DNA of 64,000 nt from Pocillopora damicornis (Eukaryota): the NCBI RefSeq assembly GCF_003704095.1, contig NW_020847110.1:1-64000 (forward strand), written 5' to 3'. The position numbers and the translations under genes were made by a program. Position 1 is the first letter of the stretch. Each line of letters opens with the position of its first letter. The notes below the pieces were generated by a model. It was given only the letters and a program-made list of their open reading frames with translations. It ran no database searches and was not told where the DNA came from. This document shows positions 5,324-41,720 of this stretch, piece by piece.

Positions 5324-7632
5324 ATGCAGCAAGCTTCAAACCAAAGCGGTCAGGAGGCATTTTTGTGGCACAAGGATGGTTACCTGGCTTATGGCACTGT
5401 CATGTTCTGCATCCTAACCATTGGTTTTGTTGGCAATGGTTTAACTCTTATTGTTTTGCACCAAAGAGAACATCGTAACCGTGGTGTAAACTCTCTGATG
5501 ATGAATCTGGCCTTGGCGGACATTTTCATCGTCGCTTTAGGTTACCCGATAGCAATTCAAGCCAACCTTAGGGGGAAGTCTCTGGACAGGTCTCGATGCA
5601 TCTGGTCTGCCTTTGTAAACGGTACCGTGGGTATAGCGTCCATCGCAACTCTAACCGAAATGGTTTTCGTTCCGTATTATGGCCTGAGGCAAGTCAACTC
5701 TGATACTAGACTATCGGTGGGACAAATCGTATGTATGATCGCTAGCGCCTGGTTGTATGGGGGTCTTTGTATGGCTCCACCTCTTTTGGGCTGGAATAGA
5801 TTCGTTCTTGCTGCCTCTAAAGTGAGTTGCTGTCCTGACTGGGCAGGAAGATCAGCTTCGGACACAGCCTACAGTCTTCTCCTTGTTGTCTTGGGATTTT
5901 TTCTTCCGCTTACTGTCATGGTCCTGTACTACTACAAAATTTACCGGTAACTTGAATTTTTGTGTTCATGGGTAAGGTAATTCACTCTCACAATGCCTCC
6001 TCCTCCCTGGGGAACATGGATGATTATAAGTGCACTTTCGAGGAAACTTGACTTAACAGTAAGGGCGGGGCTTACCTGCTGTCGGTAACATCATGTCCGG
6101 GCGGAGTAGCAATGCTCCTAACGCTGATTCATGCTACAGAAATAGCGATTCGCTCTGGTCAAACAAACTTGAAATGCTCAGCTGAAAGTAGCTCCTTTAT
6201 TTTTGAGCCATTTAAATACATATAACTCGCTGAGAGTGGAGGCGCGGTTGCCTCATGGTTAGTGCGCTCGACTTCAGATGGAGTGGTCCGGGTTCGAGCC
6301 CTGGCCGGGGTCATTGTGTTGTGTTCTTAGGCAAGACACTTCACTCTCGCAGTGCTTCTCTTCACCCAGGTGTACAAATGAGTACTAGCAAATACGCTGG
6401 GGGTAACCTTGCAATGGACTAGCATCCCATCCAGAGGGAAGTAGCAATACTCCTAGCCGCTTCATGCCAAGGAAACCGGAGTTAAGCGCCGGCCCCATGG
6501 GCCAATTGGGCCTGTATAAAGGCTTTACTTTACCTCGCTGAGGGTTTGGTAATCTCTTTAAAGAGATTTAAGTGTACATCGTTTCTAATTTTCTCATCTG
6601 TCTAAGAGATTAATGCACTCACCTTTTGCATAATCCTTCTTAACTTCAGACAAGTAAAAGTTTGTAATATCGTATTTGATAACTTTTGATAGTTTGGGGA
6701 CTTACGAGACCTATGCCTTGTTCCCCTCTTCTGGTTGAAAATGGGTGATTGTTACATAATAATCTTATTAATATACCCTCTGCTAACAAATGCTGAGCTT
6801 TCTGCCTAAAATGTGATTAACTATTGGTTTTTCTAGATAGGATCTAGGTGAGGGATCTCAATGTGGTTTAACCGTTAGCCGTAAAAATGCTGAAAAATTA
6901 ATCTTAAGGCATGACGAAACCGAAAAATCTAGCAGTGAACCATGAAACTCTTTAAACAGCCGTAAAACGGCGCAAAACCAAACCTTAAAGCGCGTAAAGC
7001 CAAAAAATTTAAAAGTTAGCTGTAAGCGCTACTACCTAAGAGATTATAAACTGTTTATAATTTCTCACCACCACCCCATTGATACCCTCAGATAATAATT
7101 CATAGGGATAAGCATTTTACAATCTCAAACTCTCAATAACCTCTCTTCCTATAGACTTGTTCATCAAGCAATTGTGCCAGGAAACATCGCAGTGCAAATG
7201 AGACGACGGTTTTCCAAACTAAAGATAGTGCGCATGACAGCGTTATCTGTGGTCATTTTTGTGCTAAGCTGGTCGCCATATTGTTTAGTCAGCCTCTTTG
7301 CAGTGTTCACCGGGAGGCATGTAATAACATCCGGAGAGGCGGAAATTCCCGAGTTGCTGGCCAAAGCGTCTGTCATCTACAACCCTATTGTGTATACCAT
7401 CAAGAATCGAAGATTTCGAACAACGCTGCTTCGTATCTTTCACGTAAGGCGGGTTAGAAACAAAGTGCATTCGTTAACGAATCAGTCGCGAAGTAGAGAT
7501 ATCCTTCAAAATAGCACGCGTTGCTATGGAAGCAAAACGAGTAAAGGCCACAACCCTATACACATCATGAAGTTAATTCCGCGAGGTCCTCTTACAGAAC
7601 GGGTCGAGCATCTACATCCTCCAGGAGTTTAA
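5324..7632 (+). CDS. Opsin 1, anthozoan-specific (ASO-II-like), ~366 aa; coding exons 5324-5946 and 7155-7632
   Basis: 7TM class A motifs GN (TM1), NLALAD (TM2), PPLLGWNRF, SCCPDW (ECL2), SWSPY (TM6), AKASVIYNPIVY (Lys296 at 7363-7365, NPxxY). Phase-2 intron CG|gtaac...cctatag|A joins the two ORFs in frame (..KIYR-LVHQAIVPG..). Confidence 0.95.
6063..6160 (+). mobile_element. Older degenerate 3' fragment of a related SINE
   Basis: GGAGTAGCAATGCTCCTA...TTCATGCTACAGAAA resembles the 3' part of the adjacent full SINE (GAAGTAGCAATACTCCTAGCCGCTTCATGCCAAGGAAA). Confidence 0.55.
6235..6533 (+). mobile_element. tRNA-derived SINE (CORE-like central domain) in the opsin 1 intron, with 9-bp target-site duplication
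   Basis: Pol III A/B-box head (TGCCTCATGGTTAG...GGTTCGAGCCC), central GTGTTCTTAGGCAAGACACTTCACTCTC segment and a (CTTTA)n tail. Flanked by the direct repeat CTCGCTGAG at 6226-6234 and 6534-6542. Confidence 0.9.
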
Positions 7633-7708
7633 TTAGAGGCGCTAGACTCTTGAGAGCTGATTTCGATACATTATATGGGTTCAGAGAAGCCGTGTATAGA
7701 TTTAACAG

Positions 7709-39755: not shown

Positions 39756-41720
39756 ATGGATAATATTACTACAAAAGATACTCACAGCTTACCAGGAGGA
39801 AAATCTTTCAACTGGCGCGCTATGTACTTCGCGTATGCCGTGGTCATGTTTGCTGTTGTAACTGTTGGATTCCTTGGAAATGTCTTAACTCTGATAATTC
39901 TTCACTACCGCGAGCACCGAAAGAAAGTCTTGACTCCTCTTATGATCAACTTAGCAGTGGGAGACATTCTCATGGTTATCGTAGTGTACCCCGTGGTAAT
40001 TGCGTCGAATCTCGTTGGTAAACAGCTTAAGGAGGGATCGCTGCGATGCAAGTGGTCCGCCTTCGCAAATGGCGCCATTGGTATAACCACTATCGCTACA
40101 TTAACTGTGATGAGCGGCGTTATGTATCACGGTATCAAACAGACTTTGCCAAAACCTAAAATACATGCTAAAAATATGTCTCTGCTAGTGTTAAGTACGT
40201 GGTTATACGGGATATTTCTTAATCTTCCTCCTGTGATTGGTTGGACCAGGGCTGTACCCGGTGAAGCTGGCATAAGCTGCGCCCCTGAGTGGACAAGTTC
40301 AGAGCCGGAGAGCGTAGCGTATATTGCCTTCCTATTGGTGTTTGGCTTTTTCCTTCCGCTTACTGTAATTGGGACGTTCCATTACATGATCTATAGGTAC
40401 GTGTGCATCAATTAATGCATGTTGAGTCGTTAGATTCAAATTACCCTAACCGTATGACGAAATATCAGTTGTGTTTTTCCACACAATATCAGTTAGCTTT
40501 CTTAGCTGGTGAGTGTCATTAACCCTTTCACCCCTAGGAGTGACCAGCATCTAATTCCCCGAATCACACAGTAAGGTCGTGAGAATGACGGAAATGATGA
40601 CCAGCTAACGGAGCTCTTGATTGTTAAACAAATTCTCCTTGTCAGCACATTAAGAAATGCACAGAGAACAGCATGGAGACTATATGTACTGATTTCAGAG
40701 CACAAAGTGGCTAACAGGCATGAAACTTAATGTAATATTATTTAGCAATTATTTGGCCAAATAGAAAAGACAACATTTCAACATGACCCTGCTTCTCCAA
40801 ACTTTTTCAGTCGAAAGCCACTTACCTTTTTATTTCCAGTCTAAATGATCTCCGTAGATCGGAAGGCACCAAAATGTGTCACGGCTTTACCGGTGATTAC
40901 CCCGCGTAAACAATACTACCCAACCACTGAGGATACAAAGGGGACCATGAAGTCATCACACTATAGAGACCATGCGTAATCGCTTAACACTCAAAATAAT
41001 CTCAAATCGTAGCAAATATCCTTGTTTCGTACAAATTACCTCGGTACTTTAACCAACGCATATTGTTTGGAACACATGAATAAACGAGGCTAGAAACTGT
41101 CATGAACGGTACTCAACTTCCATACTCTGCTACATGTCAGTATTAATATCTTTTTTTCAAAACTGGGGAAGTAAACGGGCGGATTCAAATATGTCAAAAG
41201 GGACTGCAGCCCCCATGCAGAGATGTTTAAGACTGACCACACTTCTTCAGCTCCCTCTTTCCGGACTTCCTCTGTCTGCTCCCACATTCCGTTTCCCATT
41301 TCTATTCTTTTCCGCAGGGTGATTCGACGAGTACCTCTGGAAGGAAACCCAATGATCCGCGCATGTCGAATGAAATCTAAAATGAGGCTAGTGCGCATGA
41401 CTTCTTTCTCTATAGCCGCGTTCGTGGTAAGCTGGTTACCGTACTGTGTAGTAAGCATAGCTGCTCTTGTAAATGGTCATCACGTGCTTTCATCCGGGGA
41501 AGCGGAAATTCCTGAACTGATGGCTAAGGCGTCTGTGATTTATAACCCATTCGTGTATGCCTTCACAAATGGTACCTACCGTGCTTCACTGAAGGGATTG
41601 CTTATCGGTGGTAATAGTGTCATTCGGGTTAATCCATCAGTTCTTAGAACCAGTCCGGCGCCGAGTAGTTACGTGAACTCAGTAATTATCAATCCACAAC
41701 AAGAGGACACAGCTCTGTAA
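39756..41720 (+). CDS. Opsin 4, ASO-II-like, ~347 aa; coding exons 39756-40396 and 41318-41720
   Basis: Motifs NLAVGD, PPVIGWTRA, SCAPEW, SWLPY, PELMAKASVIYNPFVY (Lys296 at 41526-41528). Intron AG|gtacgt...ttccgcag|G. Confidence 0.93.
40519..40714. mobile_element. ~200-bp MITE family B (TTAA-CCCTTT ends, piggyBac-like) in the opsin 4 intron
   Basis: TTAACCCTTTCACCCCTAGGAGTGACCAGCATCTAATT... is homologous to 49110-49323 (ACAAATTCTCC, GAGAACAG). Confidence 0.7.

What the first reader, a model, noticed from the sequence alone, without database searches (positions are those of the whole stretch)
5324..41720. Four tandem opsins lack every canonical counterion (94/113/181) but share Glu292: candidate chloride-counterion pigments
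Hand alignment to bovine rhodopsin numbering gives position 113 = Ser in all four (CxWS), 181 = A/N/G/G and 94 = A/A/V/V. Lys296 is intact and preceded by P-E292-L-[LM]-A-K, and Ser186 is kept. Established knowledge: visible-light opsins normally need Glu113, Glu181 or Glu94 to stabilise the protonated Schiff base. As I recall, coral ASO-II opsins have been reported to use Cl- as the dark-state counterion with Glu292 involved. Inference: this is an expanded cluster of such pigments, potentially pH- or chloride-tunable between UV and visible forms.
Basis: partly seen in the sequence, partly recalled or inferred. Interest (0 to 1): 0.85.

Follow-up and report, generated by a model that had tools for sequence, protein, structure and literature searches.

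The report
Four tandem coral ASO-II opsin genes
These are four intact, expressed light-receptor (opsin) genes of the coral Pocillopora from the anthozoan ASO-II family.

Summary
Observation confirmed. The window, most likely Pocillopora damicornis, carries four same-strand, two-exon opsin genes. Each has a GT-AG phase-2 intron in an Arg codon after TM5. HMMER alignments to bovine, squid and human SWS1 opsins and a 54-row alignment give 94 = A/A/V/V, 113 = S in all four, and 181 = A/N/G/G. Ser186, Cys187, Glu292 and Lys296 are present in all four.

A careful ML tree puts all four in a 100/99-supported clade. The named Nematostella members of that clade are ASO-II genes. The four sit on the branch that holds the subgroup-1 genes. 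None of the 43 rows of that clade has an acid at 94, 113 or 181, and 36 of 39 have E or D at 292. The ten other opsin-like genes I took from this genome all have Glu181.

All four are transcribed and spliced as modelled (transcript-derived proteins; RNA contigs for opsin 3).

The chloride dark-state counterion with Glu292 as helper and photoproduct counterion is published for Acropora tenuis ASO-II opsins (eLife 2025, PMC12401545). The array is inherited, not a Pocillopora-specific expansion. Verdict: new members of a known kind, low interest.

Earlier scan notes on this same window covered Cys188 and the intervening 280-aa ORF.

The parts
5324..5946 (+). op1 exon 1 (Met to TM5; holds D83, Y91, A94, C110, S113, E134-M-V, A181, S186, C187, C188, D190)
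   Evidence: ORF. 7tm_1 E 2.4e-20. Bovine rhodopsin alignment. 100% identical to residues 1-208 of the transcript-derived protein P0059. Donor CG|GTAACT.
5947..7154 (+). op1 intron (1208 nt, GT-AG, phase 2, inside an Arg codon)
   Evidence: The junction reproduces P0059 and P. verrucosa P0056 (...KIYR|LVHQ...).
7155..7632 (+). op1 exon 2 (TM6-TM7, tail; W265, E287, E289, E292, K296, NPIVY)
   Evidence: (99.4% identical to P0059 residues 209-366).
11501..12123 (+). op2 exon 1 (A94, S113, N181, S186, C187, C188, D190)
   Evidence: (99.5% identical to P0068).
12882..13368 (+). op2 exon 2 (E287, E289, E292, K296). The intron 12124-12881 is 758 nt, GT-AG, phase 2.
   Evidence: (98.1% identical to P0068 residues 209-369).
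27000..27613 (+). op3 exon 1 (V94, S113, G181, S186, C187, A188, D190)
   Evidence: RNA contigs cover 26973-27609.
27614..28790 (+). op3 intron (1177 nt, GT-AG, phase 2)
   Evidence: RNA contigs of two studies (X2, X15) skip exactly 1177 nt with GT..AG ends..
28791..29199 (+). op3 exon 2 (GEAEIPELMAKAS: E287, E289, E292, K296)
   Evidence: (85% identical to the Stylophora ortholog P0129).
39756..40396 (+). op4 exon 1 (V94, S113, G181, E182, S186, C187, A188, E190)
   Evidence: (100% identical to P0181 = pdam_00019775 / XP_027055691).
41318..41720 (+). op4 exon 2 (E287, E289, E292, K296). The intron 40397-41317 is 921 nt, GT-AG, phase 2.

Best explanation
The locus is an inherited tandem array of four functional ASO-II (anthozoan-specific opsin II) genes of Pocillopora. 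They sit on the branch of the ASO-II tree that holds the Nematostella subgroup-1 genes.

Each gene encodes a retinal-binding class-A GPCR with:
- the Lys296 Schiff-base site
- the C110-C187 disulfide cysteines
- W265 and NPxxY
- no E(D)RY motif
- no carboxylate at any of the three established counterion sites (94, 113, 181)

By homology with A. tenuis Antho2a and Antho2c, the proposed mechanism is as follows. [quoted passage not shown] That ion sits in a pocket formed by waters, the Cys187 backbone, Ser186, Tyr91, the small residue at 94 and the neutral Ser113, next to a protonated Glu292. After photoisomerisation Glu292 takes over as counterion and contributes to G-protein activation.

Shown here: gene structure, expression and splicing, residue identities, clade membership.
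Inferred: chloride binding, visible-light sensitivity, the counterion switch.
For: - Gene models, canonical splice sites and in-frame CDS lengths.
- Expression and splicing: spliced transcript-derived proteins P0059 (op1), P0068 (op2) and P0189/P0181 (op4) match the exons at 98-100%. The op3 intron is removed in RNA contigs from two studies.
- Residue identities: independent alignments to solved opsins give S113, no acid at 94/181, S186, C187, E292, K296.
- Clade membership: in the careful ML tree all four sit in a 100/99 clade with Nematostella ASO-II genes, on the 96/95 branch that holds NvASOII-8a/8b/9a/9b/11 and excludes NvASOII-3. The Nematostella names were mapped through McCulloch 2023 Table.
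- Clade-wide pattern: 0/43 rows have an acid at 94/113/181 and 36/39 have E/D at 292. Other opsin-like genes of the genome are 10/10 E181.
- No E(D)RY: positions 134-136 read EMV, EMV, AMS, VMS, as reported for A. tenuis ASO-II.
- Published mechanism: Cl- dependence was shown for Antho2a and Antho2c, and for Antho2e after R113A.
- Phylogenetic bracketing: by their published residues these three map to three different ASO-II branches that bracket the window genes. L113/A94/Y91 fits the P0137 clade, C188/D190/D292 fits the Acropora cluster P0115, and R113 fits the P0106 row inside the op1/op2 clade.
Against: - No spectroscopy exists for any Pocillopora opsin.
- In the eLife work only three of seven A. 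tenuis ASO-II opsins gave spectra, and one of those (Antho2e) is UV-sensitive.
- Antho2a has Leu113, whereas these four have Ser113.
- These four carry Glu287 and Glu289, which the Antho2a-like rows lack. The pocket is therefore not identical.
- My assignment of Antho2a/2c/2e to tree branches rests on residues quoted in the papers, not on their sequences.
- The outgroup sampling of the tree is thin: one crustacean r-opsin plus unnamed opsin-like genes of the same genome.
Confidence: 0.7

Rival explanations
1. Some or all of the four are UV-sensitive pigments with an unprotonated Schiff base in the dark, so no counterion (chloride or otherwise) is used in the dark state.
For: A. tenuis Antho2e is UV-sensitive (about 360 nm) even at 1 M NaCl. 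Mason et al. 2023 raised this possibility for acropsins 4/5, which also lack acids at 94/113/181. A Montipora row with Arg113 (P0106) lies inside the op1/op2 clade.
Against: The UV phenotype of Antho2e was traced to Arg113, and R113A restored Cl--dependent visible absorbance. All four window opsins have neutral Ser113.
Confidence: 0.15
2. A protein carboxylate, not chloride, is the dark-state counterion: deprotonated Glu292 itself, or Glu289 two helical turns above Lys296, or D/E190 or Glu182 (op4) in ECL2.
For: Glu292, Glu289 and Glu287 are conserved in the subtype-1 rows (33/39 rows have E289). The Antho2a-like rows lack E287/E289, so the Antho2a result need not transfer fully. The eLife paper does not discuss 287/289.
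Against: - In Antho2a, E292A leaves the dark spectrum unchanged, and QM/MM fits only a protonated Glu292.
- The branch I assign to Antho2c by its residues also carries GEAEVPD, and Antho2c is Cl--dependent.
- D190 is also present in bovine rhodopsin. There it pairs with R177 (established knowledge), and R177 is kept in all four window opsins.
- E182 is unique to op4.
Confidence: 0.1
3. The genes encode GPCRs that no longer act as photopigments (light-independent receptors or retinal isomerases).
For: Four of seven A. tenuis ASO-II opsins gave no spectrum. No E(D)RY motif.
Against: K296, C110/C187, W265, Y268 and NPxxY are all intact in all four. All four are transcribed and correctly spliced. 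Related ASO-II opsins signal in a light-dependent way.
Confidence: 0.04

Closest known systems
Acropora tenuis Antho2a (ASO-II; Sakai et al., eLife 2025, PMC12401545)
   Same: No acid at 94/113/181. Same E292, K296, S186, C187 and Y91, with a small residue at 94. No E(D)RY. Anthozoan ASO-II clade.
   Different: Antho2a has Leu113, and its likely clade (P0137-like, with NvASOII-3, subgroup 2.1) is the sister branch to the one holding the window genes. That branch lacks E287/E289, has His188 and is multi-exon in this genome (contig C4301). The window opsins have Ser113, E287/E289 and two coding exons.
Acropora tenuis Antho2c (Cl--dependent, 450 nm; self-regenerating through Cys188, bioRxiv 10.64898/2026.05.24.727572)
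   Same: Same broad branch of ASO-II by my residue-based assignment. op1 and op2 share Cys188 and Asp190.
   Different: Antho2c has Asp292. The matching Acropora cluster (P0115) groups with paralogs on another contig of this genome (C1103; C188/N190/D292), not with the window genes. op3/op4 have Ala188.
Acropora tenuis Antho2e (UV-sensitive ASO-II with Arg113)
   Same: A Montipora row with Arg113 (P0106) falls in the op1/op2 clade, so op1/op2 may be co-orthologs of the Antho2e type.
   Different: The window opsins have Ser113, not Arg113, so visible sensitivity is expected.
Nematostella vectensis NvASOII-8a/8b/9a/9b/11 (ASO-II subgroup 1, McCulloch et al. 2023)
   Same: The window opsins share their branch of the tree (96/95). 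38-45% identity to op1. Mostly two-exon genes arranged in same-chromosome clusters. G181, S186, E289, E292, K296.
   Different: Sea-anemone paralogs with T/N/Y at 113. No one-to-one orthology with the coral genes.
Counterion-less mutants of bilaterian opsins (bovine rhodopsin E113Q, retinochrome E181Q) with halide as surrogate counterion
   Same: The Schiff-base proton is stabilised by a solute halide.
   Different: Those are engineered mutants. Here the wild-type family lacks the carboxylate.

Membership tests
Animal (type II) opsin | Class-A 7TM fold | tested here: met
   Pfam 7tm_1 on all exon pieces, and full length on P0181 (E 2.7e-35) and P0059 (E 2.9e-32). The best solved relatives are SWS1 opsin and rhodopsins.
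Animal (type II) opsin | Retinal-binding Lys296 in TM7 | tested here: met
   Aligned to the retinal Lys of squid rhodopsin and human SWS1. K in all four.
Animal (type II) opsin | C110-C187 disulfide cysteines, W265 (CWxP region), NPxxY | tested here: met
   C110 and C187 in all four. The SWSPY/SWLPY and NPIVY/NPIIY/NPFVY motifs are read directly from the ORFs.
ASO-II (anthozoan-specific opsin II) | Phylogenetic placement with named ASO-II genes, apart from other opsins | tested here: met
   Careful IQ-TREE. A 100/99 clade of 43 rows holds the four window opsins plus NvASOII-3, -8a/b, -9a/b and -11 (names). Ten other opsin-like genes of this genome and a crustacean r-opsin fall outside. Limit: no named c-opsin, cnidopsin or ASO-I references were available.
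ASO-II (anthozoan-specific opsin II) | No Glu/Asp at counterion sites 94, 113, 181 | tested here: met
   A/A/V/V, S/S/S/S, A/N/G/G. 0/43 in the clade.
ASO-II (anthozoan-specific opsin II) | Conserved Glu/Asp at 292 | tested here: met
   E292 in all four. 36/39 in the clade.
ASO-II (anthozoan-specific opsin II) | No E(D)RY motif at the end of TM3 | tested here: met
   Positions 134-136 read EMV, EMV, AMS, VMS. The feature is stated for A. tenuis ASO-II in PMC12401545.
ASO-II (anthozoan-specific opsin II) | Intron-containing genes (all NvASO-II have introns; most subgroup-1 genes have two exons) | tested here: met
   One phase-2 GT-AG intron at the same Arg codon in all four, confirmed by transcripts. 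Comparison with McCulloch 2023.
Chloride-counterion pigments (functional class defined by Antho2a/2c) | Schiff-base pKa and visible absorbance depend on Cl-; lambda-max shifts with Cl-/Br-/I- | not testable with these tools
   Needs purified pigment and spectroscopy.
Chloride-counterion pigments (functional class defined by Antho2a/2c) | Pocket of the published model: Y91, small residue at 94, uncharged 113 (not Arg), S186, C187, E/D292 | tested here: met
   Y91, A/V94, S113, S186, C187, E292 in all four, against the model residues listed and the Arg113 effect.
Photocyclic (self-regenerating) Cys188 opsins (Opn5L1, AtAntho2c) | Cys at position 188 | tested here: inconclusive
   op1 and op2 have Cys188; op3 and op4 have Ala188. 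Thermal reversion itself is not testable here. Reference.

The most novel reading that the evidence does not exclude
The ASO-II branch that holds these four opsins carries a conserved acidic ladder on the extracellular half of TM7: E287, E289, E292 (motif GEAEIPE). The Antho2a-like branch lacks E287/E289, and the published work does not discuss them. Glu289 lies on the same helical face as Lys296. Together with Ser113 it could form a proton or chloride relay, or a second counterion. That would give these pigments a Cl-/pH dependence different from Antho2a. With Cys188 in op1/op2 only, the array would then encode mechanistically distinct photochemistries side by side.
Probability: 0.12. Interest if true: 0.5.

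Novelty: new member of a known kind. Interest (0 to 1): 0.25.

Why it matters
The chloride-counterion mechanism itself is published, so this locus does not open a new question.

Its value is comparative. It offers four intact, expressed natural variants from a robust-clade coral for testing how general the Antho2a/2c mechanism is and which residues tune it. They differ at:
- 113: Ser here, against Leu or Arg in the studied proteins
- 181: A, N or G
- 182: Glu in op4
- 188: Cys in op1/op2, Ala in op3/op4
- 190: D or E

They may also be candidate optogenetic tools. The clade table points to natural Ala292 ASO-II opsins in Porites and Montipora as informative controls.

Tried and rejected
- Spliced models. 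Exons were searched by reference. Database proteins stood in for full-length products: P0059 and P0068 as near-identical proxies for op1 and op2, and P0181 for op4 (exon 1 identical). op3 entered the tree as exon 1 only.
- Published placement. I tried to find the window genes by accession in the tree and alignment files of McCulloch et al. 2023. Twelve P. damicornis entries exist, but XP_027055691 is not among the labels found. The published placement of these exact genes could not be read off.
- Source names. I looked for Antho2a-g or acropsin names in the protein collection. None are present. Correspondence to Antho2a/2c/2e therefore rests on residues quoted in the papers.
- Structure prediction was not run. 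The tool returns no coordinates, so it could not measure carboxylate-to-Schiff-base distances, which was the only structural question left.
- 'Lineage-specific expansion' rejected. op1/op2 and op3/op4 are separate, old subclades with orthologs in Stylophora, Oculina and Montipora. No further opsin exons lie on this contig, and no called gene lies within 10 kb upstream of op1 in P. verrucosa.
- Assembly gaps in the first 4 kb of the window were left as they are.
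Full report
**What is in the sequence**

The + strand between 5324 and 41720 carries four pairs of open reading frames. All eight pieces match Pfam 7tm_1. In each pair the first ORF runs from the start Met to the end of TM5 (...Y-x-x-I/T-Y/H-R). The second holds TM6, TM7 and the tail.

Each first ORF ends at a GT donor that splits an Arg codon after its second base. Each second piece is preceded by a polypyrimidine tract and AG. The resulting coding lengths are in frame: 1101, 1110, 1023 and 1044 nt, for 366, 369, 340 and 347 aa. 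The introns are 1208, 758, 1177 and 921 nt.

Intergenic distances are 3.9, 13.6 and 10.6 kb. An unrelated 280-aa ORF lies on the opposite strand between op2 and op3. No other opsin exon was found on this contig.

**Source organism**

The genome has 234,350,878 bases in 4393 contigs.
- op4 exon 1 is 100% identical to 'hypothetical protein pdam_00019775 / XP_027055691 [Pocillopora damicornis]' (P0181).
- The P. verrucosa ortholog is 98.6% identical over exon 1 (214 aa).
- The op1 exon-1 protein cluster contains P. verrucosa XP_058953380.

I take the window to be P. damicornis or a very close Pocillopora.

**Expression and splicing**

The protein collection holds full-length spliced products on contigs of 1.4-3.6 kb from Logan assemblies. 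These contigs cannot be genomic, because the introns are absent.
- P0059 (366 aa): 100% and 99.4% identical to the two op1 exons.
- P0068 (369 aa): 99.5% and 98.1% identical to the op2 exons.
- P0189 and P0181 (347 aa): match op4.

For op3 I laid contigs of poly-A/oligo-dT RNA runs on 26700-29500. Contigs of two different studies (X2, X15) cover exon 1 and exon 2 and skip exactly 1177 nt with GT..AG ends at the predicted junction. All four genes are therefore transcribed and spliced as modelled.

Exons were searched by reference, and database proteins served as full-length proxies.

**Checking the residues**

- HMMER aligns op1 exon 1 to bovine rhodopsin without gaps through the critical stretches. 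C-I-W-S lies on C110-N-L-E113. LGYPIA places Y91 and A94. GWNRFVLAASKVSCCPDW lies on G174...E181...S186-C187-G188-I-D190.
- op1 exon 2 aligns to squid rhodopsin with its Lys on the retinal Lys and a Glu four residues earlier.
- op4 aligns end to end with human SWS1 opsin and gives S113, G181, E182, S186, C187, A188, E190, E292 and K296.
- The multiple alignment transfers this numbering to all four genes (op3 TM7 is read).

| Position | op1 | op2 | op3 | op4 |
|---|---|---|---|---|
| 94 | A | A | V | V |
| 113 | S | S | S | S |
| 181 | A | N | G | G |
| 186 | S | S | S | S |
| 187 | C | C | C | C |
| 188 | C | C | A | A |
| 190 | D | D | D | E |
| 287, 289, 292 | E | E | E | E |
| 296 | K | K | K | K |

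**What they are**

I built a careful IQ-TREE (LG+C20+F+G4, 54 rows, 336 columns). Its rows were:
- 37 full-length database hits: anthozoan relatives plus one crustacean UV opsin used as outgroup
- the four window genes
- three exon-1 fragments of paralogs from this genome
- ten intronless opsin-like genes from this genome

All four window genes lie in a 43-row clade with a long stem (1.09) and 100/99 support. The ten other opsin-like genes of this genome fall outside it.

Inside this clade, NvASOII-3 (ASO-II subgroup 2.1) and its coral relatives form one branch (99/95). A 38-row branch (96/95) holds NvASOII-8a/8b/9a/9b/11 (subgroup 1) together with all four window genes.

The Nematostella names come from the cross-reference table of McCulloch et al. 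2023.
- UniProt A9UMZ4 is given there as NvOp200.2/BR000684, and the neighbouring accessions follow in order.
- The mapping is backed by the 8a/8b and 9a/9b pairs falling into single 90% clusters.
- All of these genes lie on one chromosome.
- Three gene models on one 417,570-bp JGI scaffold match the three Nvop209 genes.

Within the array, op1 and op2 belong to one subclade (100/99) with Stylophora, Oculina and Montipora orthologs. op3 and op4 belong to another (99/96). op3 pairs with Stylophora and Oculina genes, and op4 with a Montipora gene.

The array is therefore old. It predates the split of robust and complex corals, and it is not a Pocillopora expansion.

Linkage is conserved:
- The Stylophora op1 and op3 orthologs share one 238-kb contig.
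- The Montipora foliosa relatives of op1/op2 and op4 share one chromosome.
- In P. verrucosa the same gene order is seen, including the 280-aa gene.

**The clade-wide pattern**

Across the 43 ASO-II rows none has Asp or Glu at 94, 113 or 181. At 292, 29 have Glu, 7 Asp and 3 Ala. Ser186 is present in 41.

By contrast all ten other opsin-like genes taken from this genome have Glu181, and none has an acid at 292.

The E(D)RY motif is absent: positions 134-136 read EMV, EMV, AMS and VMS.

These are the traits reported for ASO-II opsins:
- no acid at 94/113/181, Glu/Asp292 and no E(D)RY in A. tenuis
- no Glu181 in ASO-II subtypes 1 and 2.1 (Gornik et al.)
- introns in all NvASO-II genes

**How it most likely works**

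Sakai et al. (eLife 2025, PMC12401545) report the following for Antho2a (503 nm):
- It keeps its dark spectrum when Glu292 is replaced by Ala.
- It needs Cl- for a protonated Schiff base.
- It shows halide-dependent lambda-max.
- Its Cl- affinity is 0.079 mM, against 12.7 mM for E292A.
- It uses Glu292 as counterion of the photoproduct and for efficient signalling.

QM/MM places Cl- about 3 Å from the Schiff base. It is coordinated by waters and the Cys187 backbone, in a pocket with Ser186, Tyr91, Ala94 and Leu113.

Antho2c (450 nm) is also Cl--dependent. Antho2e is UV-sensitive because of Arg113, and R113A restores Cl--dependent visible absorbance.

The window opsins have the same pocket with Ser in place of Leu113, and no Arg.

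By the residues quoted in the papers:
- Antho2a matches the P0137-like branch (L113, A94, Y91).
- Antho2c matches the Acropora cluster P0115 (C188, D190, D292).
- Antho2e matches the Arg113 type seen in the op1/op2 subclade.

The experimentally studied proteins therefore bracket the window genes on the tree. This makes a chloride dark-state counterion the most likely mechanism, at about 0.7.

Because the reported Kd is far below seawater-like chloride levels, I expect the site to be saturated in vivo. pH, more than chloride, would then be the physiological variable. This is my inference.

**Rivals**

- A UV-sensitive, unprotonated dark state is possible but less likely without Arg113.
- A protein carboxylate as dark counterion is the main structural alternative. 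Glu289 and Glu287 are conserved in this branch (33/39 and 28/39 rows) and absent from the Antho2a-like branch, and the eLife paper does not discuss them.
- Against that alternative, the branch I assign to Antho2c carries the same motif and is Cl--dependent.
- D/E190 is accompanied by Arg177 in all four. This corresponds to the ion pair known in bovine rhodopsin (established knowledge). Glu182 is unique to op4.
- Loss of photoreception is unlikely given the intact Lys296, disulfide cysteines, W265 and NPxxY, and the expression evidence.

**Comparison and novelty**

The genes are members of ASO-II on every feature I could test. The functional class (chloride-counterion pigment) cannot be tested here.

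op4 is already annotated in RefSeq as 'melanopsin-like'. P. damicornis opsins were included in published anthozoan opsin trees, and the mechanism was published in 2025. What is new is only that these particular four genes are described in detail.

An earlier scan note on this same window pointed to Cys188 in op1/op2 (s1-763604). I confirm the residues. AtAntho2c's self-regeneration depends on Cys188, so op1/op2 are candidates for that behaviour and op3/op4 are not.

**Verdict**

These are new members of a known kind, and interest is low (0.25).

Noticed in passing
window 14614-15456 (-): Intronless 280-aa ORF between op2 and op3, with an N-terminal hydrophobic stretch and no Pfam hit. A 280-aa gene sits at the same relative place in P. 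verrucosa (L016:19337-20179). An earlier scan note (s1-763545) reads it as a HopBF1-like kinase homolog; I did not test that.
   Followed up: no
window 50778-51767 (-): Intronless 329-aa class-A GPCR (7tm_1 E 3.3e-26, DRF motif). It has no Lys at the opsin 296 position, so it is not an opsin.
   Followed up: partly
P0056 (P. verrucosa XP_058953380.1); window 5324-13368: The RefSeq model of P. verrucosa fuses op1 and op2 into one 738-aa 'uncharacterized protein'. Transcript-derived proteins P0059 (366 aa) and P0068 (369 aa) show two separate genes, each with its own stop codon.
   Followed up: yes
window 28966-29280 (op3 exon 2): RNA contigs of one study (X2, X14) show a second GT..AG joint that skips 313 nt from inside op3 exon 2. 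It would remove TM7 with Lys296. The flanking sides are only 26-30 nt, so it is weak. It could be a minor isoform or a mis-join.
   Followed up: no
window 28298-28579 (op3 intron): Very high contig depth in all four RNA runs, with many loose ends. This looks like a multi-copy transcribed repeat inside the intron.
   Followed up: no
P0043, P0132, P0118 (Porites harrisoni, Porites lobata, Montipora cluster): Three ASO-II rows have Ala292 and no acid at 94/113/181 either. They are natural equivalents of the E292A mutant.
   Followed up: no
G000 contigs C1103 (L001-L003), C3159 (L004), C4301 (L005): Further ASO-II paralogs in the same genome. C1103 has at least three copies with C188/N190/D292 (AtAntho2c-like), partly hidden by assembly gaps. 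C3159 has one copy with Y113/N186/D292. C4301 has one multi-exon copy with L113 (Antho2a-like).
   Followed up: partly
window 1-3773 and 58695-58797: Many assembly gaps (runs of N up to 501 bases) in the first 4 kb, at the contig start. The gaps were left unfilled. The flank upstream of op1 cannot be read here, but in P. verrucosa no gene is called within 10 kb upstream of op1.
   Followed up: partly
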